From positions 186,001 through 250,000 of IMG/VR virus record IMGVR_UViG_3300031576_000001: 64,000 bases of DNA; one strand, written 5' to 3'. The position numbers and the translations under genes are program-made. Position 1 is the first letter of the stretch. Every line of letters starts with the position of its first letter. Shown in pieces: positions 67 through 64,000 of this stretch. Below the pieces are notes generated by a model, which saw nothing but the letters and a program-made list of their open reading frames with translations, was not told the origin of the DNA and did not search any database.

Positions 67-663
67 ATGAGATACCGAGTCCTCCTTGCTGTTACCCTCT
101 TCGCCCCCACCGTGCTCGCCCAAGACCCTGTGCAAACCGAGAACCCCGCGGCTTGTACGTCGGACAGTGTTTGCATACCCAGGGAGGATCTAGCTGTTTT
201 CGTTCAACTTTTGAAAGAGCGGCAGTGCTTGGTACGCACCAAGCCTGAGATTACCCTCTCGCCCATCCCGCTGGTCATTGACCGACAGGGTAGAGTCTAC
301 GGAGAGACAAAGACCACCCTACTCATACAATGGTGTAACTTTGAGATTACAGGGGGTGGGCCCGTCAAGATTGACGTGGCGGTACAGGATGAGCCCGTGC
401 CCCCACCACCCAAGCCGTCCCTCTGGCAGCCCGCGCTAAGGCTAGGCGTGGGCTACACAGTGCAAGCCTCTTGGGATGCTTTCTTGCTAGTCTCCCCTCT
501 GGCGTACCGGGGCGTGAGTCTCAACGGTCACGCTGGGGTGCGCTCCATAGGTGGCGGTTTGGGCTACGGTGTAACCTCTTACGGAGGCTTTTACGCTGGG
601 TACAGCTACAGCTACGAGGGTAAGCACGGGGCTACGCTGGGCGTATACGGCCGGCTCTGGTTA
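67..663 (+). CDS. Secreted / outer-membrane protein with C-terminal beta-strands
   Basis: N-terminal signal peptide MRYRVLLAVTLFAPTVLAQ, Pro-rich linker, Gly/Tyr-rich amphipathic strands. Ends GATLGVYGRLW (beta-signal-like) at in-frame TTA 661-663; the standard-code end is 717. Confidence 0.6.
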
Positions 664-7822: not shown

Positions 7823-9273
7823 AACGTCTTCTTCGTGGTGTGATCCGTTGGACGGCTGAAGAGACCTCCGCCGTAGTGACCCGGAACTACCGGGCGCTCA
7901 TGGAGTCGCGTATCAAGTGGGAGAGGCATGACGACGCGGCGCTCCTGGCCTATGTGACGCAGTATTACCGCTCACACCTTGAGGTTCCGGGGCTGCAATC
8001 GGTCACGGACTACTTTACCGCGTCCAACGACGTGGAAGTCATCGAGCGCCTCAAAGACCTTGGGTCCGCAGAGGTTTACCAGGGGAGCGCCTTTGATGAA
8101 TTGATTGCCCGTGTGCAAGAGGCTCAGATCAAGCAAGCCTCTCTGGCGCTGGTGGACACCACGCGAGCCATCATCACCAAGGGGGTCAAGATTGACAAGG
8201 AGGAGCTTCTTGGACCCACGGACGGTATCCGTTACTTTACCAGGGAGGCGCCTAACGTCATCATTGCCAGTCACGGTGCCAAGGTCAGGGGCAGCGTCAA
8301 GCAAGACGCACAAGAGGAGATCGACCGGTACTACCGTGCCAAGTATGACCCTAATGGCGCGTATGGCGCTCTCACCGGGCTTGTTGAAATGGACAAGATC
8401 ATCCACGGGGGCAAGAAGGGTGAGCTTTGGATACACGCGGCTTTTGTGGGGGGGCTCAAGTCTACTTTCGCTCGTAACTGGTGCTACCACCTGGCTACGC
8501 GGGCTGGTGCGAACAGCCTGTACTACTCGCTGGAAATGCCCTTTGAGCAGGTACAGACCCTCTTTTGTGTACTTCACACAACGCACGTCAAGTGGACCTC
8601 TCAGGGGCGCACCCCGCTTGCCTACGATAGCGTGAAGTACGGGTTGCTGACCCCAGAGGAGGAAGCCTTTTACGAAGAGGTTTGCCTTGACTGGAAAAAC
8701 AACCCGGAATACGGCGACGTTTTCATAGAGAGCCCAGATGAGATCGACGTTACCATAGAGGAGGTCAAGGCTACCGCGGAAGTCAGGCACCACGAGAACA
8801 AGCTAGCCATGTTGGTTCTTGACCACGGGGGGCTTATCAAGCCAAGGGTGCGCAACAAGGACTACGTGATCGAGTTCAACAGCGTGGTCAGGGACGCCAA
8901 GAAGCTAGCCCTCTCGTTCAACAAGGGCGAAAAGATATTCGTGCTTCTCCTGGCGCAGATAAACCGGGACGGTTACGACACGGCGGTAAAGAACGCCGGG
9001 CGCTATCAGCTACGGGCGCTAGGCTACGCCAACGAGCTAGAGCGCAGCGCCGACGAGGTAACCACCTCCTTCCTGGACGATGAGCACCGGAAGAACGGTA
9101 CGGCTTTCTTTGATCACTTGAAGCGCCGGGACGGTCAACTTTACCAACCGTTTACCGCACGGATCGACTTTGCCTCTCAGCGGCTCTACAACATGGAGCG
9201 CTTCGGTGGCGAGGATGGTCCCTCTTACGACGATAACCGTAGCGTGCTGGACCTCGTACTGGGGGGCGTGTTA
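7819..9273 (+). CDS. dnaB: Replicative DNA helicase, DnaB family
   Basis: GELWIHAAFVGGLKST (Walker A variant), YSLEM, LVLDH, LLAQINR, ELERSAD. First in-frame TTA at 9271-9273 (standard end 9378). Confidence 0.85.
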
Positions 9274-18354: not shown

Positions 18355-18912
18355 ATGGCCATGTGGGACTGTTCAATACCCAAGCCTACAAACCAGACGT
18401 TCTCTGACGCACACTCTTGCTTCTCCGTTCAAGAGCTTATCGACCTGAACCAGGACAACCCTGTCGAGGAACGCCCCATAACGGACTTCAACGGGGAGCT
18501 AGAGTGTAGCCCCTGGGGCAGCCTGTCTACCCTCCGCAAGTTCTTGCACCACGCCAACCGGGTCAACTGCGCGGACACGAGCCACCCCATCCTTGTCAAC
18601 CAAGAGGGCCTAGTGCTGGACGGGTTGCACCGACTGGCTTACGCCTTCTTGAAGGGGTACCAGACCGTGAGGGTCCGTGTGGTCACAAAGTACCCACCAA
18701 ATCTCTGGGAAGAGAAAGACCTGGCAAGGCTGGCAGCTTTTGGGCTGATTACCCTGTCTCAGATAGAGGCACGCATAGTGCCGCCCGTTCCGGTGACACA
18801 ACAGGGTAATCTTTGCCCCACCCTGTCTACGGTGTGCGCCTCTTTGCTCTGTGCGGTTACCAACCCCTCCGTTAAGAGGGACGCGCCCCAGGACGAGCCA
18901 GAGCCAGCGTTA
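18355..18912 (+). CDS. ParB/Srx-like domain protein
   Basis: HPILV...VLDGLHRL motif. In-frame TTA at 18910-18912 (standard end 18981 runs over the next promoter). Confidence 0.6.
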
Positions 18913-18985: not shown

Positions 18986-20089
18986 ATGACCTACCCGAAC
19001 CTGGACGATAGATTTCAGCCGATCTACACCAAGCCCCTCACGGGGATTCCCACGGCAAAGCGTGCGCGAGCGGACGCTTCTAGCGCGGGGCTAGCGGGTC
19101 CAGCGCTAGACAGGGTGGTGAGGTTGGAGGGTGCAGAGAGGCACTGGGCGAGAACGACCGCTACCCTGGAAATGGCATTGTGGGCTGCTTTCTCGGTACG
19201 CCACCGGGACTGGCAAGAGGACACGGAGCACCGCAAGGGGTTTGCACGAGACGCGGCGAGCCTGGTCAGCGGGGGAGCCTCTGAGTTGCACTTCCTCACG
19301 GACGTGCTGGCGCTAGCCTGGGCGCACCTCACGTTGGACATCAACTACCACGGCGGCGGGAACGAGGACCAACCCGCCGTGCGCCTGCCCCCGTTCCGCT
19401 CTCTTGGGCTGGGCAAGTGGAACAAGATCGACACGGAGAGCTACGCCAGTGCCGGCAAGTCAGCCCTGGTCATCCTGGGCGAAGAGCTTGACGCTGAAGC
19501 CGAGAGGTACGCCCAAGAGGCGAGCGGGGCGACCGTTACTCAGTTTCAAGCCAGGGACGGTGAGTTGTACGTAGAGGTACGGGTAGGCTCCGTGCTTGCC
19601 GTGTCCACGCACGTTCCCCTGGCGTGGTACAGGGGGAGCGACCTCTGGGGGATTGACCCCTGGGTTGACCGTCTTTGCCTCGCCAAGCTGTCAGCCTGTC
19701 TCAAGTCTGGTTTCAAAGAGGGGATGTTGCCCTGGGCTACGTTGTACAACCGGCTGCAAGCCAGGCGCCGTGTCTTCCGGGCTGCACATTTCTGGTATGA
19801 CTTGCTGCAAAAGTTCCCCGAGTACATGGAGCCCGCCCGTACTGCTGAGCCTGGTTCGCCCCTTCACGCGGTGTGGCAGCTAGCGTGTTTGCCTTACGAG
19901 AGTGACCTCCTGGCGGCGGACCTGTGGCTCAAGAGTGTAGCCGAGGAGGGCGCTTCCATGTCACAAGCGCTAGCCTGGCTAGAGTCCCTCCACCACCTAG
20001 AGGGGGCTCTTGTCCCCCCGGACAGGGTAACCGACCATGACCTCAGTTTCCTCTCCAGCGCGTCTCCCTGCGAGGGTAGCCCAGCGTTA
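18986..20089 (+). CDS. Hypothetical protein
   Basis: GGTGTA-N10-ATG; first in-frame TTA at 20087-20089 (standard end 20146). Confidence 0.6.
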
Positions 20090-20798
20090 CGCTGCAAAGA
20101 CGAAAGCCAAAGCGCCGCCGTCAGCCCCGGAGCCCACGGGGATTGAGAAGGCAATCAAGGACGCCTTTGCTTCTCTGGGGGGCGAGTTGGGCTCTACGCT
20201 GGCTAGTGAGTTCGTCTCTGTTCTTGACAGCAAGCTAGAGAGCGCCCGTGAGCGTGTGCTCAACTTGTCTGCGAAGTCCTGGGCGGTGGCACGCAAGGGG
20301 ACAGAGACCTCCTCTTGGGAATCTGACGAGACAGGATACCACTACTCGGTCGAGCTAGACTACCCAGAGGTTGTAACGGCTACCGTGAAGGCGCCGTTGT
20401 CGTGGGACACACTAGTCACTGAGGTTGCCCAAGGGGTAGACACAAAGCACCGTGGTCTCGCCGTAGAAGTTATGCGTACCCCGGCAGTAAAAGCAGCTTG
20501 CCTCAAGGTGGCGGAAGAGCGGGTGGCGCTACAGACCATTGAAGCAGGAGAGCTACGGACCTCACCTCTGGGTGCGTCCGCGGTAGAGTTCGCTGAGGAC
20601 AAGTCACAAAGGTCCATCGACTCCGACGACGACCCCAACTACGAGATACCCTGGGGTAAGCACGAGATTACGGTACACGGGGGCAGCGTGACCGCAAAGC
20701 TAACCTCCTCTGGCGCGCTGGACGTACTCTTTACCGCGAGCGTCGGGCTAGAGGTTGAGTTTTTCTGGCCCGGTGACCGTGGGTACAACGATTGGTTA
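20037..20798 (+). CDS. RVAxRY-leader protein (putative virion internal protein)
   Basis: N-terminal LPARVAQRYAAK; ends at TTA 20796-20798. Confidence 0.6.
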
Positions 20799-20843
20799 CT
20801 TAGAGGCTCCCTGGCTTCTATCCCTCACAAACAGGGAGAAGCC

Positions 20844-21998
20844 ATGCCCAAAGACGTTGACCGCTACCACGACGAAGTATTGAAAAGCAACCCTGACTAC
20901 TCAGAGGCTCAAGCATGGGCTACGGCGTGGTCAATTTTCTGCCGGAATAAAGACCCTGGGTCGGAGCACTGCAAGAAGCCCACGTCGGAGTACCTCTCAG
21001 GCAAAAATGCGGGGCTACTGGTCAGGGTCGCCTCTGCCTACCTCGACAAGCACGCAGCGCAAGACCCTGAGTATACCTCGCACCTCAAGCACTTCCTGGT
21101 AGCCCTGGACAAGGAGGTCAACAAGCTGGCGGGTCACCGAAGCGAGCCTTTGACGGTGACGACCAAGGACTTTGGTGGTGCGAGGGGTCTGCCGCGCGTC
21201 ATTGTCCAGGGACCGAAGGCACAGCACTACCTCTTCGTGGTCGAGAAAGGTAACCCCAAGAAAGCCTACGGGTGGCAAATTTCGCTGTGCGACGCAGAGA
21301 GCGGCGCCCCTCTGAAGGGTAAGAAGCCTGTGGGTACGCTGAACCCTCGCCCTGAGAAGCGCTGGGCAAAAGACCCCATTGGGTGGCACGACGCCTTTGC
21401 TAGCCTGCGGTCACTTGACCTTGACGCACTCTACGGCAAAGAGGACTTGACCGAGGAGGAGCTAGCCCCTGGGTCTACACGGTGGGACGCCCTTGAGGAG
21501 CTACCTCCCATGGAGACTGAGATTCCTGGGGACGACGCTAGCTGGTCTGACCTGGAACAAGTCAAGAATGCAGCAAAAGCTAAACCGTCTAGCAAGTGGA
21601 AAGACCTTGGCAGCTACAGTCGCGAGGCCACAGCGGTTGAAGAGGCTATTGCTAGTCTGGACGCGGTAGAGAAGGAAGTGAGCCAGGGTATCGAAGAGGC
21701 TACCTCCAAGCTCAGACCTACGTGGGTTGGGGACGCAAAGAAAGTGGTGGGTGAGGTTTACAACAAGCTCCAAGCTGCCTTGAGGAGTGCGGACTTGACG
21801 TTGGGGGCTATGGGTCCAGCACTCCGAAAGTTGCCCCTACACTCCAAGCTAACCCAAGAGGCTGTCGCCATGGTGTCTACTCTGGAGAGCGCGGTTACGC
21901 GGCTCACCGCAGTGCGAGCGGCTTTGAGTCGTGCCACGGTTGGGGACACCCCGGCGGTAGAAGCTGCTTTGGCAAAGACAAAAGCACTTCTAGGTTAG
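20844..21998 (+). CDS. Putative virion protein with ChaB-like N-terminal motif
   Basis: Has its own GGGAGAAGCC-ATG start; SEAQAWATAWS, LLVRVASAY, KNA/KHA sites. Confidence 0.55.
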   Translation: MPKDVDRYHDEVLKSNPDYSEAQAWATAWSIFCRNKDPGSEHCKKPTSEYLSGKNAGLLVRVASAYLDKHAAQDPEYTSHLKHFLVALDKEVNKLAGHRSEPLTVTTKDFGGARGLPRVIVQGPKAQHYLFVVEKGNPKKAYGWQISLCDAESGAPLKGKKPVGTLNPRPEKRWAKDPIGWHDAFASLRSLDLDALYGKEDLTEEELAPGSTRWDALEELPPMETEIPGDDASWSDLEQVKNAAKAKPSSKWKDLGSYSREATAVEEAIASLDAVEKEVSQGIEEATSKLRPTWVGDAKKVVGEVYNKLQAALRSADLTLGAMGPALRKLPLHSKLTQEAVAMVSTLESAVTRLTAVRAALSRATVGDTPAVEAALAKTKALLG

Positions 21999-25188: not shown

Positions 25189-26355
25189 ATGACCGTCAAG
25201 CAAGCCGCCTCTATGGGTGACCCCGCGGTACTTCTATCGCAACTTTCCAGTCTTAGCTTCGACCTGGACCGCAACGTGGCGGATCTCAAGGAGTACCACG
25301 CCAAGCTAGAGCGCCGCGACCCAGACCGTTACCGTAACAGTTCTATCGTAGATGCTGCTTGGAAGCAATTCGGAGACATTCTCGGGTCACGTAAGGTGCG
25401 CGACCTTGGTTTTGCGCTCCTACAGGATTACGATATGACGGTAGCCCACCGAAAGGCTGTCGAGGTGGGGGTACACTTGCTCAGTCACGGCGCCCGTCCC
25501 AAGGCGCCAAGGACGGGTGACCGCGCGTTGGCAATGGCTAGCTTCGTCTTGGACCGGTGCATCACGGTGCAGAACCTTCTCAGCTCCGCAAAGGTGGTCA
25601 TTGAGTCAGGCAAGAAGCACAGCACAGAGGGTGTGGGTGCTACAGCCAACGCAACGAAGTTTCCCGCAGGCAGCTTCACAGTAGTCAACTCTGGCGGGTT
25701 CCCTGAGAAGACCATCAGAACGGTCGTGGACCTTGTAAAGAAGGCGGACCAGGCTCTAAAGCGCAGTGGATTCCCGCAGGTTTGCTATGGCCCCGTGTTC
25801 ATCACGAAGACAGTGGGTCGCTCGTCCAGTGTGCTGGCGTTCTACGATCTGAAGACGGATGATATGTACGTCCGCGCTAACCTGAAAGGCTCGGGCAACA
25901 GCATCCTCCTGAACTTCTTGCATGAGGTAGGGCACCGCTTTGACTTCAAGTTTCTAAAGGATAACCAGGGTAAGCAACGCCTCTACAATGAGGTTTCCAG
26001 GCAAGAGGGTCAACGTGAATTTATCGCACCCATCGTGGGTACACAGTTCAAAGACCACAAAGGTCTGAACTGGGAGGTTCTACGTGTAAGCGGCTCTTCC
26101 CTCTATGTGCAAGACGCAGAGGGGCGCACGGGGACAATGAGTGTGCGTGGGTACTATGAGCAGACCGGCAAACTAAGGGACACGGCTAACCCTAAGCACC
26201 TTGGGTTTGTGTCTGCTTATGCCAAGACTGACCCCGATGAGAACTTCGCTGAAATGTTCTCTCTGTACTGTGATGATACGCTCCCCGTCATGCAAAGCCT
26301 CTCCTTTGAGGAAGTGTGCTTTGGTAAGCAGGACACGTCACGCAAGACCGCGTTA
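25189..26355 (+). CDS. Zincin-like metallopeptidase (HExxH)
   Basis: FLHEVGH; VSAYAKTDPDENFAEMF. TTA at 26353-26355 (standard end 26367). Confidence 0.75.
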
Positions 26356-26364
26356 GCTCAGAGC

Positions 26365-26841
26365 TAAGGCGCCCATTAGCTCGCCCCAGTCCGAGGCTAG
26401 TAGGAAGTCGGCACAGAGGTGTACACCCTCAGTCAGCCTCGGGAGCTTGCGGTAGGCACACCCAAGAGGCGCTGTCCCTGCAAGGCAGGGGGGCTCAGGC
26501 GTGTCCTCCTCGCGCAGCCGCGGACCTTCGTAGCACTGGCTACCCAGGCGAGACCCGTAGGTGTACGCCTCGCTGTAGTACGGGCAGTGGTTAGCGGAGA
26601 CCTCTTCGGGGGTAAACTCGACCGTGATCCGCCAGTGTCCCCTTATAGGCTTCTGACCTGACCAGTTCTTGGGGAGGGGCAACAGGGTGCTCAGGTAGGC
26701 TCGCCCCTGTGCCTGACTGCAACGGTAGTTAGGGCAGTCAAGGTAAGCGTCCGGGTGGCGGTCAAAGAAGCTTGTGTCGCCGTCGCCTGTAAAGTAGCGG
26801 TCAACGAGCACGGTCTCTTTACGGAGGGGGGGTGACGGCAT
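26365..26841 (-). CDS. Cys-rich hypothetical protein
   Basis: GGTGTA-N12-ATG; TTA at 26365-26367 (standard end 26353). Confidence 0.5.
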
Positions 26842-38142: not shown

Positions 38143-38664
38143 ATGCCCAACTTGCGAGACGAGCAACACCGAAAGATAGGGTGGGTCGTGATCCTCCCTG
38201 ACGGGGCTTACGGGGAGGTAGTCTCCTGGGACAGGACTCTCCGGCTCGCCAAGGTGAAGACCCTCTCTGGGGTAACGGAGCACCCAGAGGAGGATTGCGT
38301 GACCTACGCTTACCCAGCGGAGGAGTACGCTGCTCTCAGCCTGCCCCCGGTAGCTACCGCCAAGAGGGGTACGGTGGTGAATGTCGAGGTACGGCGGTCG
38401 CCCCGGGTGGGCGTGGTTCAGCGTGACACACTCGCGCCTTACCAGGGGTGGGTCTATCGTGCGCCCCGAGGGTTGTACCTTCACCCCAACGTGAGGGTGC
38501 GTTTTGGTGAGACAGTGTGCGTGGTGTGGACCGATGGTTCGCTCACGTCCATGCTGGTACCCAAGAATTACGGAACTGTGGCGAGCAAGCGAGCGCTACG
38601 CGAGACAGCGGAAGCTACTGCCAGGAACGCCTCTTGGTGGGACGACAAGAAAGGTGAGTTTTAG
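38143..38664 (+). CDS. Hypothetical protein
   Basis: ATG 38143; an in-frame TTA lies just upstream of this start. Confidence 0.55.
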   Translation: MPNLRDEQHRKIGWVVILPDGAYGEVVSWDRTLRLAKVKTLSGVTEHPEEDCVTYAYPAEEYAALSLPPVATAKRGTVVNVEVRRSPRVGVVQRDTLAPYQGWVYRAPRGLYLHPNVRVRFGETVCVVWTDGSLTSMLVPKNYGTVASKRALRETAEATARNASWWDDKKGEF

Positions 38665-39551
38665 TGCAACCACAAGCCAAGGTCATCCTCGATAGCGTCA
38701 CTCCGGGGGGTTATCGCCTCACCACGTTGGAGGTCACCTACCACCGATTCGTGCTCGCAGAATTGAATACCCACAGAACCCTGTCGCGTAACTCGGGTAG
38801 CTCGCGGGCTATCCCTCTCAGTAAGACGCTGGACTTTGTGCGTAACAACACGGCGTTGCCGGTTCACTGGGGTAAGAACCAGAAGGGGATGGTAGCCGAA
38901 GAGGAGATTAGCCCAGAGGATCAACGCCAGGCGGCTACCGTGTGGATGCGAACCATGAGCGCGGCGGCTAGTGGGTCAGAACAGCTAGCGGCTCTTGGGG
39001 TACACAAGCAGCTAACTAACCGACTCATCGAGCCCTACTCCTGGCAACGCAGCATTTTCACGGCGACCGAGTGGGATAACTTCCTGGGGCTACGGGTGGA
39101 CAAGGACGCTCAGCCCGAGTTTTACGCTCTGGCGCTAGCTATACAGCAAGCCCTGGTTACCAGCACCCCTACGCTTCTCTCAGAAGGTCAGTGGCACCTT
39201 CCCTACGTGGACGGAGCTACCCGCGCCGCCTTCTCTGAGGCGGACTGCATCAAGGTCAGCGCCGGACGGTGCGCCAAGGTCTCGTACCTCACCCACGAGA
39301 CCAGTGCCGACCCTTGCGATGACATCGACCGGTGCAACCGTATTCTTGAGGCTGGACACTTCTCGCCCGCCGAGCACCAAGCCATGAGCTTGACCAAAGA
39401 GGGTTGGGTAGAGTACGCCACCGAAGCGTTCTGCCGGTTTCTCTCTGACCGTATACCGCTGGGTAACCTGCAAGGGTGGGTTCAGTACCGCAAGCTACTC
39501 ACGGACGAGCACGACTTCTCACGGGTCAAAGCCAAGAGGCGGGTTGGCTTA
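38664..39551 (+). CDS. thyX: FAD-dependent thymidylate synthase
   Basis: RFVLAELNTHRTLSRNSGSSRAIP, HKQLTNR, AQPEF, HFSPAEH. Ends at TTA 39549-39551. Confidence 0.85.
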
Positions 39552-40136
39552 GTGCCTGTATCCTTGCCCCTCTTGGAACGTGAGGAAGCCCGGCTCGTCG
39601 CCAGCCGGAGCTTGCTTGGTAAGCCTAGCCCGGGTGTGTCGTGTCGCCGGGGGTGCTCCTCTTGCTGCTACCGCCCCGTGTACGCCACCGTCCTAGAGGG
39701 CGCCGCCGTGTACCGCTCTCTTAAAAGGAGGGGCATGGGTGACCTTGTACCCCCCCTCAAAGCCCACGGGGAGAACCTACGTAGCCAAGACCCCCTAGTA
39801 TGGTTCTTGTCGCGGCAATCCTGTCCCCTCCTCACGAGCACCCGGGAGTGCTCTGTGTACGACGGGCGCCCCATGGCGTGCCGCGCACATGAGGTCACTT
39901 CTGACCCGTACCTGTGTGACCCGCACCAGCTATCAAAAGGATTGTCTGTTGTTGACCGAGAGGCGGATCTACAGGGGTTTGCCAAGCAGGCGCGCAGCGG
40001 GGAGCTAAGGCTAGGATGGCGTCTACCCACGCTCCCTCTTGGGTTGGCGGTCTGGCTAGCCGGCGAGGTTATCGAGGGTCGTGTCCCTACGGAAGAGGTG
40101 CCCCAGAGGGTGTTCCTCTTGCTGGCTAGGGGCTGA
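39552..40136 (+). CDS. YkgJ/FliB-like Cys-cluster protein
   Basis: CRRGCSSCC...CPLL....CSVYDGRPMACR; GTG immediately after the TTA. Confidence 0.75.
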   Translation: MPVSLPLLEREEARLVASRSLLGKPSPGVSCRRGCSSCCYRPVYATVLEGAAVYRSLKRRGMGDLVPPLKAHGENLRSQDPLVWFLSRQSCPLLTSTRECSVYDGRPMACRAHEVTSDPYLCDPHQLSKGLSVVDREADLQGFAKQARSGELRLGWRLPTLPLGLAVWLAGEVIEGRVPTEEVPQRVFLLLARG

Positions 40137-40261
40137 GGGTTGGGTGGTGTCCTGATTAGGGCAATTTGGCTCAAACTCGGGTGCCACTAAGGGTTGTCCC
40201 TGACCGGGGTGTTGCGCGTGGTGTGCAACACGGTGCAATCAGGCAACACGTAGGTAAAGCT

Positions 40262-40588
40262 ATGGCAAAGTGTGCTGTGTGCGAGCGTAACTGGGAAAAG
40301 GGGGTCACCTTGACCCTCTCCGAAGCAGAGCGAGCCGTCTTCCGAAAAGTGGGACTCGACCCGGTAACCACGCTCTTCTACTGCAACCCGTGTTACCGCC
40401 TCCTCTCAGAGAACCAAGCGCAAGCGGCGTCCTTCATGAAGGGGGTCTATCAGGTGGGGGCGCGGGCTCAGGGCGTAGCTCCGGCGTTGGTAGCCCAGAG
40501 GGGAGACGCCTTGTACACCAAGCTACTCCCCGGCGCTGCTTTGCCAGGCGGGCTCCGTGGGCGCAAAGACAAGCTCAAACCAAGCTAG
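40262..40588 (+). CDS. Zn-finger protein
   Basis: CAVC...YCNPC. Confidence 0.5.
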   Translation: MAKCAVCERNWEKGVTLTLSEAERAVFRKVGLDPVTTLFYCNPCYRLLSENQAQAASFMKGVYQVGARAQGVAPALVAQRGDALYTKLLPGAALPGGLRGRKDKLKPS

Positions 40589-40708
40589 CCCCAGGATGAG
40601 CGCAAAGAGCGCCAAGATTCGCAAAGCGCCGTAAGCCTTCCGGGTAAAGCGTCGCATCTTGCTCGGCATGGTGTAGGGTACACCACGCTTTCTGACACGG
40701 CGCCACCC

Positions 40709-41251
40709 ATGAGAAAGATCCTGTTTCTTGACATAGACGGCGTGGTCAACAGCCACGCTTACAGGAAAGAGCCCAAGCACTCCAGGGGTGCCTACGGAAC
40801 GATGTGCTCCTGCGGTGAGATTGACCCCCTCTTGGTGGAGAAGCTGAACGCCATCCTACAGGGGCACCCTGACACGGAGGTTGTGCTGTCGTCAGCGTGG
40901 AGGTACGACGAGACCCCCCCGAGCATGACCATGACGTTGCAGCACCGGGGGTTTCGGTACGTGGTCACGGACAGCACCCCCAGAACCTCGGACGAGCGCC
41001 TGACCGAGATTGCCCTGTGGTGGGCAACGCCTTTCTACCCAAGCGAACCTGTTGCCTTCGTGGTGTTGGACGACTTGATACCCACGGTAGACGCCCCGTG
41101 GTGTGTCTGTACGAGTGCCTGGGTAGGGCTCACGGACGAGGATGTGGTGAAAGCCAAAGCCGCCCTGGGTACGCCCGTGACTCAAGAGGACTGGGCGCTG
41201 TTTATTGCCGCTGCCTTCCCTGAGAAGGATGAGGAAGACCCTGATGCGTAA
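40709..41251 (+). CDS. HAD-superfamily protein (Swiss Army Knife RNA-repair-like HAD)
   Basis: ILFLDIDGV, VLSSAWR, FVVLDD, GLT. Confidence 0.8.
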   Translation: MRKILFLDIDGVVNSHAYRKEPKHSRGAYGTMCSCGEIDPLLVEKLNAILQGHPDTEVVLSSAWRYDETPPSMTMTLQHRGFRYVVTDSTPRTSDERLTEIALWWATPFYPSEPVAFVVLDDLIPTVDAPWCVCTSAWVGLTDEDVVKAKAALGTPVTQEDWALFIAAAFPEKDEEDPDA

Positions 41252-41272
41252 GCCGGAAATAAGGAGAGATCC

Positions 41273-41878
41273 GTGTCAATACCGCTGATAACACCCCTGT
41301 CCCCTGAAGACCGTATCCAGGTGAGGAACCAGCTAGAGAGGCTCCCTGTGGAGCTACGGCTAACGGTTCTCAGTCACGAGTTTTACAACTCCCCGCCAGA
41401 GGACCGCATGTTCTGGCTTGAGGCTGCCGGAGATTACGGTTTCAACCACGCTGACCTTGAAAGGGCTACCACGACGAGGGAAGGCATGGTTGCCTCTCTG
41501 CAAGACCTTGTACCGTCCTGCAAGACCGAGGCTCAGCAACGGGCGCTCCTCAAGGTGTTTGCTGGCGTGATCCTGGTAGCCGAGGGGGTTTGCAAGGGCG
41601 ACCCCAACTTTGAGCTAGCCGGGAGGGATGTTTACGCTGCGGCGCTCACGGCTCTTCGTGACGCCTCTCCTCAGAGGGAAACCCAGCCTGTCATCACCGG
41701 AGAGGTACTCGACGCTTTGACTGCTGAGCTTACCAAGGTGACCACCCGCGAGGATTTGCTAGCCTGGTACGTCCAGGTAGGCGCGGACGTGGACAGCCTC
41801 TCCGTTGTCGAGCGTAATCACCTGTTTGCAGCGATCCGCGCAAAGAAGGCTAGCCTCACAGGGGGTAGACAACCGTGA
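41273..41878 (+). CDS. Hypothetical protein
   Basis: AAGGAG ribosome-binding site before the GTG. Confidence 0.6.
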   Translation: MSIPLITPLSPEDRIQVRNQLERLPVELRLTVLSHEFYNSPPEDRMFWLEAAGDYGFNHADLERATTTREGMVASLQDLVPSCKTEAQQRALLKVFAGVILVAEGVCKGDPNFELAGRDVYAAALTALRDASPQRETQPVITGEVLDALTAELTKVTTREDLLAWYVQVGADVDSLSVVERNHLFAAIRAKKASLTGGRQP

Positions 41879-42411: not shown

Positions 42412-42471
42412 CCCCAGGGAACCTACAGACATCAACAGAGGACTACTCACCTTGGAAAGGATGCCTGCCGA

Positions 42472-42681
42472 ATGAGCCGCGAAGATGCAATGAATCGGTA
42501 CTGGACAGAGCAGGCTGCTGTCAGCGCGAGCACTCGTGACGCAGCTCAGAAAGAGCGCACTCGTTTGCTCGCTGCAATACGGGAGCATTTGGTAGAACGC
42601 AAGGCTTACCTGGCGAAGGACGAGACGGAGCGCAAGGCAGAGCTAGACGGTGTGCTTCTCTATCTAGACACGCTCAAATGA
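42472..42681 (+). CDS. Hypothetical protein
   Basis: Short helical ORF. Confidence 0.45.
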   Translation: MSREDAMNRYWTEQAAVSASTRDAAQKERTRLLAAIREHLVERKAYLAKDETERKAELDGVLLYLDTLK

Positions 42682-42866
42682 CAGCCCTCAGCACAAAACT
42701 GCTCACCTTGGAAGAGGCGATTGAGCACTGCCAGGAGAACGCTGTCGGAGACACCCCCTGTGCCAGGAACCACCGCCAGCTAGCCGAATGGCTTCTTGAG
42801 CTACAAGCTAGGCGCTACAACAAGGCCCCCACCGTCGCGTGGGGTCAGGGTCAGGGTCAGGTATTA
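42678..42866 (+). CDS. Hypothetical protein
   Basis: TLEEAIEHC...HRQLAEWL. TTA 42864-42866 is shared with the TAA of the convergent gene. Confidence 0.55.
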
Positions 42867-43307
42867 GAGGGTACCGTAGGCTTCCTCTTCGCTCACTTCC
42901 CGACCAAGCTCGCGGAAACACGCCTTGAGCCGGGCGTTTAGAGCGCTCGCCCGCCGCCGCACCTGAGCGTAGGAAAGCTCACCGTCACAAGAAAGATTTT
43001 CAGGGCTTAGCTGGCAGTACAACCCCAGGATCTCCCGCTTGACCTCAGCCTCGCTCCGGGGCGCCTTCGGAGCAGAAGGCTCCGTGGCGGGAGGGGGCGC
43101 TGTGGTGGCACCCTGCGGGGCGAGAGTCACCAGCGAGCGCGCCACGTTCCACACGGACCCCACGGCGTAAGCCTTGAACGTGCCGCGAGACTCCAACTGC
43201 CTGACCTTGATGGTCTTGCTGTTGACCTTGACGAACACCCCGAGGGTCTTCTCCCCGTTGGCGCGTCCGAAGAAAACCTTGTCACCAGCCTTGATATTCT
43301 GTTCCAT
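42864..43307 (-). CDS. Hypothetical protein
   Basis: GGAGG site then ATG (MEQNIK); LSPENLSCDGE motif. Confidence 0.65.
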   Translation of the reverse strand: MEQNIKAGDKVFFGRANGEKTLGVFVKVNSKTIKVRQLESRGTFKAYAVGSVWNVARSLVTLAPQGATTAPPPATEPSAPKAPRSEAEVKREILGLYCQLSPENLSCDGELSYAQVRRRASALNARLKACFRELGREVSEEEAYGTL

Positions 43308-43355
43308 GGTCACTTGCCTCCGTGTCGTGCGTCGTTGTTGAAAAGGCAGCCTGCC

Positions 43356-43763
43356 TAACGTCCAGTAGGGGGGTTTAGCGTTACCCTTACGTGTGCCCGT
43401 GATCTCGACGAATTTCACGGTTTTCTCGACGCGGGCGCCGTTCTTCCGAGAGAACTGAACCACCACCCCCGTGCCGGTGACACGCTGCACCGTGCCGTTG
43501 TACGTGCCGCACCCCCCGGGGCAGGGGTAAGCCCACGACACCACCGCACCGGGGTAGAGGTAGACGCCGCGGGACCAGCAAAACTCGACCCACTGGTCCA
43601 GGGCGTCCTTGTGTGAGCCGTGGGCGGGCATCACGGGGACCGCAAACAAGCCTTCCTTGTCGCGGCTGTCCACGCAGAGACCTTCCACCACGGAGAGGGT
43701 GAATTCCTTATGGGTGCCGCGGTTACCGACGATGACGAGGTTTTTGAGGTTGAGGGGGCGCAT
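43356..43763 (-). CDS. Hypothetical protein
   Basis: Starts at a CGTA-class promoter; ends at in-frame TTA 43356-43358. Confidence 0.6.
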
Positions 43764-43772
43764 AACCCCTCT

Positions 43773-44739: not shown

Positions 44740-46524
44740 ATGACGCTATGTGACCGGGTAGCCGCGAAGTACAAAGAGAAGAAGAAGGTCAAGACCCAGA
44801 AGGGCGAGTCTACGGTCTACCTCTACTCGGAACGCCAGGTCAAGAACCGCAACAAGGAAAAGGCCAAGAGGCTAGAGTCTCTTCGCAAGAACATTGGTGA
44901 CCTTATGGGTCGCGTCAAGCGTGACCTAAAGTCTGAGGACGTGGACACCAAGCTAACCGCGCTCGCCGTTGCGCTTGTTGACTCTACGTATGAACGAATT
45001 GGAAATGAGGAATCTGCGGACGAGCGTGGGCACTACGGGGTTACCGGGTGGCTCAAAAGTCACGTCAAGTTCAGCAAGAGCAAGGCGGTTATCAAGTACA
45101 CGGGCAAGGCTGGCGTCGAGCACACCAAGGAAGTAAAAGACAAAGCCATTCTCTCCGCGCTACGTGACGCTTGCGAGGCGGTTGAGAAAGACGACCCGAT
45201 CTTTGAGTACGACGGGGGCACCGTGACCCCTGAGAAGGTCAATGCTTACCTGAAACCGTCCAAGATAACAGCCAAGGACTTGAGGGGCTATCATGCTAAC
45301 GATACGATCAAGGCCATTCTGAGGACTCTACGCGGTAAGGGCGGCAAGCTCCCCAAAGACAAGGAGGAGCGCAAAGCTAAGCTCAAAGAGGAATGGAAAC
45401 AAGCCCTCGCAGAGACGGCTGAGATTATTGGGCATGAGTCCATTACATTGAAAAAAAGCTACCTTGTGCCCGGGCTTGAGGCAGACTTCATGAAAAACGG
45501 CACGGTAAACGATAAGATGGCTTCCCTACAAAGCTCCCGGTACTCTTCTATTGCTCAGCGAGTAAGCCAGCGATGGGCGCACCTTCACGATTGCGTGATC
45601 CACGCGGGCTGCCCTGTGTGTGGCTTCACGGTGGACGAGGCTACCGGAGAGGTATACGACCCTGGCTACCCCTGTCCTGTGTGTGGCGTGGGTGGCGCCG
45701 TTGTGCTTTCCGCTGAGGACTCCCTGGGTCGACAGAAGATAGCCTCTGAGGCGGACTCTGAGGTTACGCTAGCGGCTCGCGTGATGGTAGCGGCTTATCA
45801 AGGCTCCCCGGGGATAGACAAGACTGCCAACATGGCGGGTCGTGTCAAAGACCTACTTGCCCTTTGGAAGCGGGCACCCTCCGTGTGGGAGAAGATCAAA
45901 GAGGCTATTGGTTTGCCCGACGACTTCGACAGCCTCTCGATGCTGGGCAAGGCGCACGCCCTCATGGGAGCCTTCAAGGAGTTTGCGGCGCAGGGGAAGA
46001 AGGCAGTCGCCCACATTTTCCACCAGCTACCGACGACCTTCCCTCTCAGCATGTTCTTCGTGCCGCGTAAGAAGGTGCCAGGCATCACGGACCTTTTGGC
46101 AAGACTGGTTGACGAGGTACCCTGGCTCAAGTCCGCGCTAGGCAAGGCGAGCGCTCACCTGGGGAAGCTGGACGACTTGCTCGACAAGTACGTGCCCATA
46201 ACCAGCAAGGTCATCAAGGCTGCCGCCTTTATCTGGGTCTGGTTTGCGGCAGCCGAGCTATCGTGGGACATACCGTTTCTGGTCAGGGGTTTTACGGGGC
46301 TCATCGGGCTAGGGGAGCTTTTCGGCTCCATGCCAGAGAGCGCCCTGGGTCTGATAGCCAGCATGTTTGGGCTAGGGTACGGCGCCCTCCCGGTTACCTT
46401 GGTTATCCGGCTTGTCTGGCTTGTCGCAGAGGATTACCTCTCTTGGGTACCCGGCAAGGGGCTCAAGGTTCACTGGGACAAGCTAGGCATACAACGCCAC
46501 GATGAGCTAGTGGTGACTGCGTTA
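44740..46524 (+). CDS. DNA topoisomerase IB fused to a Zn ribbon and a hydrophobic C-terminal domain
   Basis: RIGNE, YTGKAGVEH, TAKDLRGYHAN, IGH...KKSYL give the R-K-R-H-Y pentad; CPVC twice; TM-like tail. Ends at TTA 46522-46524. Confidence 0.8.
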
Positions 46525-52382: not shown

Positions 52383-54665
52383 TAAGATGGCGATCTTGAC
52401 CTCGGAGAGGGCGAACGTGGCTTGTACGTCCCCCAGCTTGGCGGTCTTCAACGTCAGCTTGCAGTTGTCCAGGGAGGTAAACTCCGAGAACCATACCTGC
52501 CCAAGCACGGTGGCGAGCTTGATCTGTGCGATTTCCCTGAGAAGCTCCCTCGTCTCACGGGTCGCCTCCTCGGCGCGGGCGCGTAGCCAGGTCAACCCTT
52601 CCTCGGGGTACTGGAGGGCAACGTCCTTGATGGCAGGCTCCATCAGCAAGGCGCCAGCGTTACCCTTACCCTTGGCCAGCTTCTCCACAGCCTCTTTGAG
52701 GGAGGGCAACGCTGAGAGCCCCTTGAGACTCACGGTAAGCTCGCTTCCGATGTAATGGTCCGTGGACTCCTTGGTCAGCGCCTTGGGTGCGAACCCGCCG
52801 TAATCCGTGATCCCTTGCTCTTTCAACCAAGATGAAACCTCTTCGCCGTGGATAGCGCTGTACCCCAGGCTGGTCTTGCCCCCACCGTAGTCCTTGAGGT
52901 ACCCCTGGTAGACCTTCTGCCGGGCGCGAGCCTCGGTAAGCTGCATGACCTTCTCGCCCAACGTCTTGGCTGAGAGGGTCTTGGTCATGGAGCGGTTGAC
53001 CACGGCAAGGGAACCCAGGTCAAGAACCGCCTCGACCTCAAAGTCCAGCTTGGTCTCGGAGAGAACCGGTACCCCTTTGGCTTTCAGGTTGGCTAGCGTC
53101 TCGTGCGAGACCTTGACCGGCAAGCTCTTGACATTGACCAGACCGTCACGGATGATGCTGTAGTTCCGGTGAATGTAAGTAGGGAACTTCTCGGGGAGGT
53201 TGCCCACCATGGACGGGGGGAGCCGCTTGGAAAGGTCCACGGTCCCCCACACCTTGACCTGTAGGCTCACGTTCGGGCGATCCTCGTTGTAAACGAGGTT
53301 TTCGATGGTCGAGCCCGCTTCCTTCTCAGCCTCATCGGGCACGAACGTGAGAGGCTCTGGCTTGCTGGCGACAATGCTTGCAATCTTCTCTTGCAAGGTT
53401 TTGACAGCGGCTACCGTGATCTTGGGCTTGCTCATCTGAGCTTGCAACGAGGCGATCTCAGCCGTCTCCTCGTCCGTGAACCGCGAAGAGGCATCCTCCC
53501 GTGCGCGCCCGATCCGGGTGTACTTCCACTCGGGGTGGTACGGCAGAACCCGGTTGGTGCTGTCCGAGGCGAGGATACTGAGCACGTCCAGCACGGTCAC
53601 GGCGTTGTCGTCGGGTACCTTGGTGGGGTCGTAACCCTCTTGGTAGCGAGCGCCCGCGTCAAAGGCTGCCTTGGTCACGTCCGCCTGAAACTCGCTGTAC
53701 TTCTGCTTTCCGAAGCACTTGGCAAACCGGGTAATGAAGCGCACGTCACCCGTGAACTTCAACAAGGGGAGCACCACGTCGGGCTGCATCCGGCTTGAGA
53801 ACAGGCTAATCGCCGCGTACACGGGGGGCAGTACCGCCTCGTCAGGCTTCCCCGTGGTCGGCGCACCCCCCTTGCTCGCAGAGAGGTAGTACACGGTGGT
53901 CACGTCGGGGGGTACCGTGACGGAGCCCCCCTCTACGCCAAACGTCAGCACGTCACCCTGAGAGAGGGCAAAGGCCACGTTACCTACCGCGTCCCCGGAG
54001 AGGGTCAGCGTCTTCTTGGGGGTCGCCGCGACCTTGCGCCCGAAAACCTTGGTGATTTGTGGCTCGTAAGCCGAGAAGTCCTCCGTGAAGAGGAGGGCAC
54101 CCCCCAGCTTGGCTGCCATCGCAGAGAGGAGGGAGCGGTCAGCGTAAAACCCCCACTCGACCACGGCGGCACTATCCGCCTCAATCTTGCCCAGGGTAGC
54201 CAGGATCTTCTCTCGGCTCCCCTGGTTGTCGTAACCGTCGCTGAGGAACAGGAGGGCTACTGCCTCCCCGGGGTGCGCCTTCCTTAGCCTGGCGATCACG
54301 CGCGCCGCTTCCTCCAAGGGGTCTTGGAAGCCTGTGAGCCCTACCGGCTTGAGCCAGCGGTCCACCGCAGCGTTGACCTTGGCCAGGTCTTTGAGGTTAC
54401 GTAGCGCCACGTCCTCGAAGATGACCCCACACTCCCCCCTGCCGGAGAACCAGATCAGGCTCACGGTGTCCTTCTCGCCCACCAGCGAGGGAAACTTGCC
54501 CTTGATCTGCGCTCGCATGTCGGGCAGCGCACCGCTCATTGAGCCGCTGCAATCGACAACCAGCAAGTGATTCGTCGGGGGCGCTTTCGCTGGGGTGCTG
54601 TCTTTGCCCGCGCTAAAGGCTACCAGCGCGAGTCCGTTACCAAGAGGCGTTGTTGTCGGTTTCAT
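52383..54665 (-). CDS. vWA-domain protein
   Basis: MIDAS VVDCSGSM, GLT, FLSDGYDN. The only in-frame TTA follows EVKIAI (standard end 52194). Confidence 0.85.
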
Positions 54666-63566: not shown

Positions 63567-63636
63567 GGTGCGGGGTAACTTAGCACACCACAAGGGCTCC
63601 GCACGCTTTGGCGCTAGAAGGGCGTACCGAGAGGGT

Positions 63637-63867
63637 TAAGGGGTACTGGCTACGCTTCAGGTACCAGACCCACCTTGCGTCAAAGGGGCCAGACTGAGGG
63701 GGTACGACCACGGCGGGCTTTGCGGGTGGCTTGTTGCAAGCGCAGTCATTGTTCTGGTGGAGCCCAAAGAGCTTGACCTTGACGATGCCCACCGTGTACA
63801 GCGGTACCGTGAGGGCGAGCACACGCCCGACGTGCAAAGCTCCCATCACGTTTTGCGCGAGACCCAT
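63637..63867 (-). CDS. Small hypothetical protein
   Basis: ATG 3 nt after the upstream in-frame TTA (63871-63873); ends at TTA 63637-63639. Confidence 0.45.
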
Positions 63868-64000
63868 GGCTAAGCCATTAGCCTCTTTGCGGAGACTCCG
63901 CTCACTGGCGCCAAGGTAGGCGATCTGAGAGTGGTCCACCGTGCCAGCCTTGCCTGCCTCAAGGCTCGTTGCCCGAGGGACTACCCTCATGCTCACGTCC

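What the first reader, a model, noticed from the sequence alone, without database searches (positions are those of the whole stretch)
39549..39554. TTA sits exactly at the junctions of four apparent fusion ORFs
ThyX|YkgJ reads GGC TTA GTG, so the Cys-cluster gene starts in the next codon. ORF 20037..21998 has TTA at 20796 and then GGGAGAAGCC-ATG at 20844. ORF 42864..43763(-) has TTA at 43356 and then GGAGG..ATG at 43307. ORF 63580..63996(-) reads TTA GCC ATG. In each case the downstream gene is in frame, so any UUA decoding would produce a fusion. This suggests a possible conditional, bldA-like or stage-specific read-through switch (inference).
Basis: partly seen in the sequence, partly recalled or inferred. 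Interest (0 to 1): 0.75.

Follow-up and report, generated by a model that had tools for sequence, protein, structure and literature searches.

The report
TTA is a fourth stop codon
In this 322-kb jumbo phage from a cave metagenome the leucine codon TTA never occurs inside conserved genes but ends about a quarter of all genes exactly where relatives have TGA/TAA/TAG; this sense-to-stop code change was previously known only from organelles.

Summary
In detail: all four TTAs sit exactly at gene junctions. But they are four of about 100 such sites. Genome-wide (322,633 bp, GC 58.6%), in-frame TTA is 37-fold enriched in the last 40 codons of standard-code ORFs; no other codon exceeds 1.6-fold. None of 183 in-frame TTAs lies inside a conserved region. 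Base composition predicts about 393 in-frame TTAs. Where orthologues exist, their TGA/TAA/TAG aligns on our TTA (79 of 79 loci for the vWA gene; codon-exact for the major head protein). Sequence after TTA looks non-coding. TTATG stop-start overlaps occur. All 60 other sense codons keep their standard meaning.

With TTA as a stop, usage is TGA 150, TTA 102, TAG 74, TAA 68. The phage's 39 tRNAs lack tRNA-Leu(UAA), which two relatives carry. No relative shares the pattern. An independent assembly of the reads is identical, so this is not an assembly error.

The bldA-like conditional fusion switch is not supported: 14 of 62 downstream genes are in frame, no excess. Replication and structural genes both end in TTA.

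The mechanism is inferred, and the release factor and host are unknown.

The parts
38664..39548 (+). ThyX (flavin-dependent thymidylate synthase) coding region, 295 aa
   Evidence: PF02511 and phrog_85 cover residues 4-290. 80 homologues end at about this length.
39549..39551 (+). TTA acting as the stop codon of thyX (the flagged site)
   Evidence: Sequence GGC TTA GTG. Homologues stop here and none is fused to YkgJ.
39552..40136 (+). YkgJ-like CxxCxxCC protein, 194 aa, GTG start in the codon after TTA
   Evidence: PF03692. Stand-alone homologues of 209-214 aa in relatives L117 and L109 align from their N-terminus.
20037..20795 (+). Upstream gene of junction 2 (253 aa, function unknown)
   Evidence: Positive coding score before TTA. 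No family match.
20796..20798 (+). TTA stop of junction 2
20844..21998 (+). Downstream gene of junction 2 (384 aa), ATG preceded by GGGAGAAGCC
   Evidence: Homologue P0126 begins at its residue 1 with MPKDVDRY, aligned to this ATG at 69% identity.
43359..43763 (-). Upstream gene of junction 3 (135 aa)
43356..43358 (-). TTA stop of junction 3
42864..43307 (-). Downstream gene of junction 3 (147 aa), GGAGG then ATG at 43307, TAA stop
   Evidence: Positive in-frame coding score.
63871..63873 (-). TTA stop of junction 4. The upstream gene of 202 aa starts beyond the window end.
63640..63867 (-). Downstream gene of junction 4 (76 aa), ATG three bases after TTA. It ends at a further TTA (63637-63639).
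52383..52385 (-). TTA stop of the vWA-domain protein gene (52386-54683, 766 aa)
   Evidence: The phrog_2426 profile ends at residue 764. In 79 of 79 related loci the canonical stop maps to this codon, at offset 0 to -2. Codon alignment.
9271..9273 (+). TTA stop of the DnaB-like helicase gene (7813-9270, 486 aa)
   Evidence: phrog_19. Orthologue stops lie at +2, -1 and +1 codons. The 35-codon tail scores as non-coding.
661..663 (+). TTA stop of a 198-aa gene (67-660)
   Evidence: Orthologue stops at offsets 0, 0 and +19.
46522..46524 (+). TTA stop of a 751-aa gene (44269-46521)
26353..26367 (.). Convergent gene ends TTAGCTCAGAGCTAA. Each gene's TTA is the reverse complement of the other's TAA, so either codon could be the end here.
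18910..18912 (+). TTA stop of a 185-aa gene. Further TTA stops of genes of at least 100 aa lie at 675(-), 1703(-), 9867(+), 20087(+), 46833(-), 47661(+), 56117(-), 60115(-) and 61719(+).

Best explanation
In this phage the triplet TTA (UUA) is a termination codon used alongside TGA, TAG and TAA. The codon table is the same as NCBI table 23.

Shown: TTA is excluded from conserved coding sequence, sits at the positions of orthologous stop codons, and ends about 26% of genes of all functional classes. The four 'fusion ORFs' are adjacent genes that happen to be in frame with no canonical stop between them.

Inferred mechanism: UUA had already become very rare as a leucine codon in this phage clade. 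tRNA-Leu(UAA) was then lost from the phage's own tRNA set, and a UUG-only tRNA-Leu(CAA) is present instead. UUA is now recognised by a class-I release factor with relaxed reading of the second base. By analogy with UUA-terminating organelles, this would be an RF2 altered at the Ser of the SPF motif. The factor would be encoded by the unknown host or by the unassembled third of the phage genome. Because early-type and late genes both end in TTA, termination at UUA must work throughout infection. That favours a host whose own translation system already terminates at UUA, or at least does not decode it.
For: Position: TTA runs at 0.27 per 1000 codons in ORF middles and 10.16 per 1000 in the last 40 codons. 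No other codon exceeds 1.6-fold.

Frame: no in-frame TTA lies inside the four-stop gene bodies, against about 393 expected from position-specific base composition. There are 701 and 476 in the two other frames, the same behaviour as TAA.

ORF structure: adding TTA as a stop leaves ORF coverage at 0.887 to 0.878 and N50 at 400 to 385 aa. Any other rare codon drops coverage to 0.75-0.82 and N50 to 215-271 aa.

Homology: 0 of 183 in-frame TTAs is crossed by a homologue alignment without a stop in the subject at that column. The vWA orthologue stop falls on our TTA in 79 of 79 loci. 44 TTA-terminated genes have orthologues in three fully fetched relatives, and the orthologue stop lies within 3 codons in 54% of 107 comparisons, against 61-69% for canonical-stop genes. 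In codon alignments TTA lies under TGA/TAA/TAG for the major head protein, the vWA protein and three other genes. At the 2363|206-aa junction, two relatives have an in-frame canonical stop where we have TTA.

Sequence after TTA: tails score -0.27 on the codon-usage measure, against +0.33 before TTA and -0.56 after canonical stops. Five TTATG stop-start overlaps occur. The distance to the next in-frame stop is the same as after canonical stops.

Rest of the code: the other 60 sense codons align to their standard amino acid. TAG behaves as a stop.

tRNAs: the 39 tRNAs include Leu GAG, UAG, CAG and CAA but not UAA. Relatives G001 and G003 carry Leu(UAA).

Lineage: relatives of the same GC content use in-frame TTA rarely (0.44-0.75 per 1000) and evenly. 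That fits codon disappearance followed by capture.

Sequence quality: Logan contigs of run X1 (word depth 11.8) are identical over 5,901 bases. A 151-nt contig of run X2 covers the TTA at 43356.

Precedent for the mechanism: UUA stops in Labyrinthulea mitochondria and peDinoflagellate plastids go with substitution of RF2 Ser204. Those organelle genomes also lack tRNA(UAA) (PMC12574857).
Against: All of this rests on one metagenome-assembled contig, rated about 68% complete by CheckV, and on one sample. There are no protein or RNA data, so termination is inferred from sequence statistics.

No release-factor domain (PF00472, PF03462) is encoded in the 322 kb, and the host is unknown. The release-factor step is therefore analogy only.

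The only bacterial lineage found with RF2 GPF in place of SPF (four Armatimonadia MAGs) still uses TTA as Leu inside SecA and other Pfam domains, and it shows no link to the phage. That substitution alone does not imply UUA termination.

None of the 79 related loci shares the code.

About a quarter of TTA stops are followed by a canonical stop within 5 codons. For those genes alone, the two readings differ by only a few residues.
Confidence: 0.82

Rival explanations
1. UUA is an unassigned ('hungry') codon rather than a true stop. No tRNA reads it and no release factor recognises it. Ribosomes stall there and are released by rescue factors or peptidyl-tRNA drop-off, or occasionally read through by near-cognate tRNA. 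TTA then works as a leaky gene end.
For: No tRNA-Leu(UAA) is present among the 39 phage tRNAs, and no release-factor gene is found. TTA stops show an unusual context: TGG is the preceding codon in 11 of 102 cases against 5 of 292 for canonical stops, and A at +4 occurs in 3 of 102 against 55 of 292. That would fit a context-dependent, non-standard release. Unassigned codons are known in bacteria, for example CGG in Mycoplasma capricolum (cited in PMC8629427).
Against: A codon that only stalls ribosomes should be avoided everywhere. It should not be recruited to end 26% of genes, including the major head protein. In bacteria, rescue by tmRNA tags the product for degradation (established knowledge). 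There is no excess of in-frame back-up stops after TTA relative to canonical stops, as a leaky end would predict.
Confidence: 0.1
2. One reading: a bldA-like conditional switch. UUA is decoded as Leu only when a regulated tRNA-Leu(UAA) is available. This gives stage-specific fusion or extended proteins at in-frame junctions.
For: Eight or more in-frame gene pairs are separated only by TTA. Three share the junction TTA-sCC-ATG-GGy. UUA-dependent regulation exists in Streptomyces and has been proposed for its phages (PMC10732093).
Against: There is no in-frame excess: 14 of 62 (23%) against 1/3 expected and about 26% after canonical stops. Tails after TTA are non-coding by codon usage and are not conserved. 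TTA is never used inside conserved coding sequence, unlike bldA targets. Two relatives have the same in-frame arrangement at the 2363|206 junction with an ordinary stop, so being in frame there is inherited and not tied to TTA.
Confidence: 0.04
3. Artefact: the true base is not T. The TAA stops would be misread through assembly error, sequencing error or base modification, or the transcripts would be edited from UUA to UAA.
For: TTA is one transversion from TAA. The phage encodes several DNA methyltransferase domains. All data come from a single sample.
Against: An independent assembly of the reads is identical over 5.9 kb that includes three TTA sites, and a read-length contig of a second run covers one of them. 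The 'error' would have to follow gene orientation on both strands and hit only in-frame positions. General UUA-to-UAA editing would change Tyr and Phe codons in other frames, yet TAC, TAT, TTT and TTC align normally to Tyr and Phe. The missing tRNA-Leu(UAA) and the lack of any internal TTA are not explained by an artefact.
Confidence: 0.02
4. TTA is ordinary leucine, and the long ORFs are real fusion or C-terminally extended proteins, as public standard-code gene calls assume.
For: Public gene calls translate through TTA: P0005 is 823 aa and P0125 is 580 aa.
Against: Every test above speaks against it: the 37-fold positional bias, orthologue stops aligned on TTA, non-coding tails, separate homologues for both halves of ThyX|YkgJ, and no cognate tRNA in the phage set.
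Confidence: 0.01

Closest known systems
NCBI translation table 23: mitochondria of Thraustochytrium and other Labyrinthulea (UUA = stop)
   Same: The codon table is identical: standard code plus UUA as a terminator. No cognate tRNA(UAA) is encoded. UUA sits where homologues have standard stops (PMC12574857).
   Different: That case is an organelle with a few dozen genes and a dedicated mtRF2a mutated at Ser204. This one is a 322-kb bacteriophage that depends on a bacterial translation system. No release factor has been identified, and the genome is 58.6% GC.
peDinoflagellate plastids (UUA and UCA = stop) and the mitochondria of Marsupiomonadales and Pseudoscourfieldia (UUA and UUG = stop)
   Same: These are sense-to-stop reassignments of a leucine codon. 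The new stop ends a large share of genes (over half in two of the three peDinoflagellate plastomes), and cognate tRNAs are absent (PMC12574857).
   Different: In the phage only UUA is affected. UUG aligns to Leu and UCA to Ser. There is no sign of RNA editing, and the setting is not an organelle.
Stop-codon-recoded phages (Lak megaphages, crAss-like phages and others; TAG or TGA read as an amino acid)
   Same: A phage whose code differs from the standard bacterial code. It is a large genome with its own tRNA array, which even includes a suppressor-type tRNA(CUA) (PMC7886860 and PMC8346664).
   Different: The direction is opposite: a sense codon becomes a stop rather than a stop becoming sense. 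TAG, TGA and TAA all still behave as stops here. The new stop is used in early-type and late genes alike, not concentrated in late genes.
Streptomyces bldA / rare UUA regulation
   Same: UUA is very rare in a GC-rich system, and its reading depends on a single tRNA (PMC10732093).
   Different: bldA targets carry UUA inside coding regions and it is read as Leu. Here no UUA lies inside a conserved coding region, and it coincides with orthologous stops.
Unassigned codons in bacteria (CGG in Mycoplasma capricolum; AGA and AUA in Micrococcus luteus)
   Same: A codon driven to near-absence by composition, with loss of its tRNA. This is the presumed intermediate stage here (Osawa-Jukes codon capture; cited in PMC8629427; M. 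luteus from my own knowledge).
   Different: Unassigned codons are simply avoided. Here the codon has been taken up again in large numbers (102 gene ends) with a new meaning.

Membership tests
UUA-as-stop genetic code (NCBI table 23 type) | UUA absent from conserved sense positions | tested here: met
   0 of 183 in-frame TTAs is spanned by a homologue alignment lacking a stop at that column. About 393 in-frame TTAs are expected from composition.
UUA-as-stop genetic code (NCBI table 23 type) | UUA occupies positions where homologues have standard stop codons | tested here: met
   79 of 79 loci for the vWA gene. 44 genes compared against three whole relatives. Codon-level alignments. Junction with an in-frame stop in relatives.
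UUA-as-stop genetic code (NCBI table 23 type) | All other codons keep their standard meaning | tested here: met
   In the codon-to-aligned-residue table, the top residue is the standard one for all 60 other sense codons. TAG, TAA and TGA behave as stops.
UUA-as-stop genetic code (NCBI table 23 type) | No tRNA with anticodon UAA | tested here: inconclusive
   It is absent from the phage's 39 tRNAs, while relatives G001 and G003 have it. However, the contig is about 68% complete, and the host tRNA set is unknown.
UUA-as-stop genetic code (NCBI table 23 type) | Release factor altered in its codon-reading region (RF2 Ser204 of SPF, or a modified RF1) | not testable with these tools
   No RF-1 or PCRF domain is found in the contig and the host is unknown. 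A scan of 185,579 species genomes for RF2 with [A/G]PF found only four Armatimonadia MAGs and one Pseudomonas. The three Armatimonadia genomes sampled show no TTA enrichment at gene ends, and in G007 TTA lies inside Pfam domains such as SecA.
UUA-as-stop genetic code (NCBI table 23 type) | Peptide release at UUA shown biochemically or by proteomics | not testable with these tools
   Only DNA runs of one cave metagenome hold the sequence.
bldA-type UUA-dependent regulation | UUA inside coding regions of regulated genes, decoded as Leu | tested here: not met
   No internal TTA lies in conserved sequence.
bldA-type UUA-dependent regulation | Selection for productive read-through (in-frame downstream genes, conserved extensions) | tested here: not met
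   14 of 62 downstream genes are in frame, no excess. Tails are non-coding and not conserved.
Stop-to-sense recoded phage (code 4 or 15 type) | In-frame TAG or TGA inside conserved genes | tested here: not met
   Alignments crossing TAG or TGA either carry a stop in the subject or are spurious. ORF coverage is 92% with the standard stops.
Stop-to-sense recoded phage (code 4 or 15 type) | Phage-encoded suppressor tRNA | tested here: met
   A tRNA with anticodon CUA lies at genome 307803-307877 on the minus strand. It is present without detectable TAG recoding.

The most novel reading that the evidence does not exclude
The four-stop code is imposed by the phage and not inherited from the host. 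The phage would bring a near-complete tRNA set that deliberately omits tRNA-Leu(UAA). It would remove or outcompete the host's UUA reader, and it would supply or exploit a release factor that accepts UUA, possibly encoded in the unassembled third of the genome. Host mRNAs and those of competing phages that contain UUA would then be truncated, while the phage's own genes are read correctly. This would be host shut-off and superinfection exclusion through code incompatibility. The evidence does not exclude this. It also does not exclude the alternative that the host itself is the first known free-living cell with a sense-to-stop reassignment, which I consider somewhat more likely.
Probability: 0.2. 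Interest if true: 0.95.

Novelty: new variant of a known kind. Interest (0 to 1): 0.9.

Why it matters
All variant codes described so far in bacteria and phages turn a stop into a sense codon or swap one amino acid for another. Sense-to-stop changes are known only from organelles with tiny gene sets. Full-text searches found no phage or bacterial case.

A 322-kb phage with about 400 genes that ends a quarter of them in UUA would show that a bacterial-type translation system can gain a fourth stop codon. This has three consequences:

- **A testable target.** It points to an unknown host, and either an RF2 variant or a new release mechanism, that can be looked for and tested.
- **An annotation error.** Standard-code gene calling of such genomes gives fused and over-extended proteins, as the public calls for this contig already do. 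Screens based on profile alignment do not report new stops.
- **A natural model.** It offers a natural counterpart to the engineered sense-codon recoding that is used for virus resistance and biocontainment.

Tried and rejected
- **Close relatives.** Megablast of 6 kb against 50,697 phage records gave nothing. A single-protein locus search gave nothing. The best protein relatives are 46-48% identical, so no sister genome was available to date the change.
- **Shared code in relatives.** None of the 79 loci around the vWA gene and none of the 80 ThyX loci shows TTA enrichment at gene ends.
- **Phage-encoded release factor.** PF00472 and PF03462 gave no match at E up to 1.
- **Host search through RF2.** I scanned genome contigs for HRLVRx[A/G]PFD...RRHT. 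This found four Armatimonadia MAGs with GPF and one Pseudomonas. In about 345 kb of the three Armatimonadia genomes sampled, TTA shows no enrichment at gene ends. In G007 it lies inside Pfam domains, including the conserved FDVQL of SecA. Only generic tRNA similarity to the phage was found. The lead is rejected as a host link. The Cys variant of the motif was not scanned.
- **+1 frameshift onto TAG or TAA after a hungry UUA.** Rejected. A at +4 is depleted (3 of 102), and C or T follows in 49% of cases.
- **Leaky stop with selected back-up stops.** No excess was found.
- **TAG recoding by the tRNA(CUA).** Not seen.
- **Composition or motif effect at 3' ends.** Rejected, because only the in-frame TTA is affected and no other AT-rich codon is enriched.
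- **RNA evidence.** No RNA run is listed as holding the sequence (that search was not RNA-specific), and the one read-laying run gave contigs only.
Full report
**What the window is.** The window is bases 186,001-250,000 of a single 322,633-bp contig with GC 58.6%. The contig is an IMG/VR virus record, linear, and rated about 68% complete by CheckV. It was assembled from a cave metagenome. It is a jumbo phage. It encodes a DNA polymerase, helicases, ThyX, a major head protein (phrog_2522), a tail protein and an array of 38 tRNAs. Its nearest relatives are uncultivated phages of 300-500 kb that share only 46-48% identity in a conserved vWA-domain protein.

**The observation.**
- Site 1: GGC TTA GTG at 39546-39554.
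- Site 2: TTA at 20796, then GGGAGAAGCC-ATG at 20844.
- Site 3: TTA at 43358-43356 on the minus strand, then GGAGG and ATG at 43307.
- Site 4: TTA GCC ATG at 63873-63865 on the minus strand.

ThyX families cover residues 4-290 of the 295 residues before the first TTA. The CxxCxxCC domain lies after it.

**The four sites are part of a genome-wide rule.** I built a simple non-overlapping ORF set with table 11 and listed every in-frame TTA. There are 183 among 99,231 codons. In long ORFs nearly all lie within a few codons of the canonical stop or near an over-extended start.

- In ORFs of at least 200 aa, TTA runs at 1.56, 0.27 and 10.16 per 1000 codons in the first 40, middle and last 40 codons. 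The 37-fold enrichment at the end compares with a maximum of 1.6-fold for any other codon.
- The effect is specific to the reading frame. Gene bodies contain 701 and 476 TTAs in the two other frames. About 393 in-frame TTAs are expected from position-specific base composition, and none is present. This is the behaviour of TAA.
- Declaring TTA a stop barely changes the ORF landscape: coverage goes from 0.887 to 0.878 and N50 from 400 to 385 aa. Declaring any other rare codon a stop shatters it: coverage falls to 0.75-0.82 and N50 to 215-271 aa.
- With four stops the gene models end in TGA 150, TTA 102, TAG 74 and TAA 68.

**What follows TTA looks like what follows a stop.** Tails of 12-70 codons between TTA and the next canonical stop have a mean codon-usage score of -0.27. 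The stretch before TTA scores +0.33, and sequence after canonical stops scores -0.56. The next in-frame canonical stop comes within 5 codons in 24% of cases after TTA and 22% after canonical stops, in all three frames alike. Five next genes start in a TTATG overlap, the counterpart of TAATG. Others start a few to some tens of bases downstream.

**Homology.**
- *The vWA protein.* Its PHROG profile ends at residue 764 and TTA is codon 767. In all 79 related loci the relative's canonical stop maps to that codon, at offset 0 to -2.
- *Three whole relatives.* I fetched three relatives in full: G001 (407 kb), G003 (363 kb) and G004 (312 kb). Forty-four TTA-terminated genes have orthologues there. 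The orthologue's stop lies within 3 codons of our TTA in 54% of 107 comparisons, against 61-69% for genes with canonical stops.
- *Codon-level alignments.* TTA lies directly under TGA/TAA/TAG for the major head protein, for the vWA protein, and for three further genes with tails of 20-46 codons.
- *An apparent counter-example.* A 2570-aa table-11 ORF seemed to be continuous in the relatives. In fact two relatives carry an in-frame canonical stop where we have TTA, followed by the same second gene.
- *All in-frame TTAs.* Of all 183, 55 have a homologue within 70 residues, and none is crossed by an alignment that lacks a stop in the subject at that column.
- *The rest of the code.* A codon-by-codon tally of aligned residues gives the standard amino acid for all 60 other sense codons, including TTG = Leu and TCA = Ser. 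TAG, TAA and TGA behave as stops.

**The four junctions.**
- *Junction 1.* ThyX homologues in 80 phage loci end 0-20 residues after the position aligned to residues 282-293, and none carries a YkgJ domain. YkgJ homologues in related jumbo phages are stand-alone genes of 209-214 aa behind a different gene. They align from their N-terminus to the GTG that follows TTA.
- *Junction 2.* A homologue (P0126) starts at its residue 1 with MPKDVDRY, which is our ATG at 20844.
- *Junctions 3 and 4.* No homologues were found. They show a ribosome-binding site plus ATG, or ATG three bases after TTA, and positive coding scores on both sides.

**Is it a switch?** I found no support. Of 62 co-directional downstream genes after TTA, 14 are in frame (23%). 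The expectation is 1/3, and the figure after canonical stops is about 26%. The apparent fusions, eight or more genome-wide, are the in-frame pairs that happen to lack a canonical stop in the spacer. TTA ends replication and nucleotide-metabolism genes (DnaB-like helicase, ThyX) as well as virion genes (major head protein, tail protein). TTA stops are spread evenly over the genome and both strands. This argues against stage-specific use.

**tRNAs and lineage.** The phage's tRNA set covers nearly all codon boxes. It has Leu tRNAs with anticodons GAG, UAG, CAG and CAA but none with UAA. Relatives G001 and G003 carry tRNA-Leu(UAA). Relatives of equal GC content already use TTA rarely (0.44-0.75 per 1000) but evenly along genes. 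None of the 159 related or ThyX-bearing loci shows the end enrichment. This fits the sequence of codon disappearance, loss of the tRNA and capture as a stop. TGA ends 38% of gene models here. Among table-11 ORFs of at least 200 aa it is the stop of 56-65% in G004 and G001, against 54% in this genome, where many such ORFs run through a TTA first. This hints that TTA stops were gained partly at TGA's expense, as expected if an RF2-type factor reads U-(G/A/U)-A. That last step is inference.

**Artefact?** Logan's independent contigs of run X1 (word depth 11.8) are identical over window 39400-45300. A 151-nt contig from a second run of the same sample covers the TTA at 43356. An error or base modification would have to follow gene orientation and reading frame. 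General UUA-to-UAA editing is excluded by the normal Tyr and Phe alignments.

**Mechanism.** The step I could not show is what releases the peptide. No RF-1 or PCRF domain is encoded in the contig. In organelles that terminate at UUA, the cognate tRNA is absent and RF2 is substituted at Ser204 of the SPF motif, or mtRF1a is remodelled (PMC12574857).

I scanned one genome for each of 185,579 species for RF2 with Ala or Gly at that position. I found only four Armatimonadia MAGs (GPF) and one Pseudomonas. The three Armatimonadia genomes I sampled show no end enrichment of TTA, and G007 uses TTA as Leu inside SecA and other domains. They have no specific similarity to the phage. The lead does not identify the host.

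My best account is a release factor with relaxed second-base reading in a host, or a phage-encoded factor, still to be found. Because early-type and late genes both use TTA, a host-level property is somewhat more likely than a phage-imposed one.

Two context biases remain unexplained and may bear on the mechanism. TGG is the last sense codon before 11 of 102 TTA stops, against 5 of 292 canonical stops (p = 3e-4). A at +4 is nearly absent: 3 of 102 against 55 of 292 (p = 3e-5).

**Comparison and novelty.** The codon table equals NCBI table 23. UUA stops are otherwise reported only from Labyrinthulea mitochondria, peDinoflagellate plastids, and the mitochondria of Marsupiomonadales and Pseudoscourfieldia. 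Known phage codes go the other way, from stop to sense. Full-text searches found no phage or bacterial sense-to-stop case. I rate this a new variant of a known kind. Confidence that TTA marks translation ends is high, about 0.9. Confidence in the release-factor mechanism is moderate to low, about 0.4.

Noticed in passing
Genome 307803-307877, minus strand (outside the window; L228/L229): An amber-suppressor-type tRNA with anticodon CUA, which ARAGORN labels 'Pyl'. TAG nevertheless behaves as a normal stop. Relatives also carry suppressor-type tRNAs: G001 has two with CUA, and G004 has one with UUA and one with UCA.
   Followed up: partly
Genome 25159-27942 (L217:5159-7942): The tRNAs with Leu anticodons GAG, CAG and CAA are only 74-77 nt long and lack the long variable arm of bacterial tRNA-Leu. 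The relatives' Leu tRNAs are 83-88 nt. CTC, CTG and TTG still align to Leu.
   Followed up: partly
All 102 TTA stops, for example window 661, 20796 and 46522: There are context biases. TGG (Trp) is the last sense codon before TTA in 11 of 102 genes, against 5 of 292 for canonical stops. A is almost never the base after TTA (3 of 102 against 55 of 292), and C is raised at +5 to +7. These are unexplained.
   Followed up: partly
Window 63865-63873(-); genome 177186-177197 and 63682-63693: Three unrelated in-frame gene pairs share the junction TTA-sCC-ATG-GGy, with the restart three bases after the stop.
   Followed up: no
Window 26353-26367: Convergent genes end in the palindromic sequence TTAGCTCAGAGCTAA, so each gene's TTA is the complement of the other's TAA. 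A similar pair lies at genome 276223-276262.
   Followed up: no
L231, L233, L234, L235 (Armatimonadia MAGs): RF2 in four Armatimonadia species has GPF in place of the otherwise invariant SPF codon-reading motif (HRLVRIGPFDANKRRHT). These are the only such lineage among 185,579 species genomes scanned. TTA is still Leu there (SecA codon 93 in G007). What the change does is unknown.
   Followed up: partly
Window 2893-7050 (+): The 1385-aa helicase ORF (phrog_62) contains a LAGLIDADG homing-endonuclease match at residues 759-963. This may be an intein or an inserted endonuclease.
   Followed up: no
Window 31387-33942 (+): An 851-aa ORF has DNA methyltransferase matches at both ends and a middle region resembling the large subunit of anaerobic ribonucleotide reductase. 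The architecture is odd and may include an insertion.
   Followed up: no
Window 52194-54683(-) and 20037-21998(+): Public gene calls for this contig (P0005 at 823 aa, P0125 at 580 aa) run through TTA. The deposited proteins are therefore over-extended or fused.
   Followed up: yes
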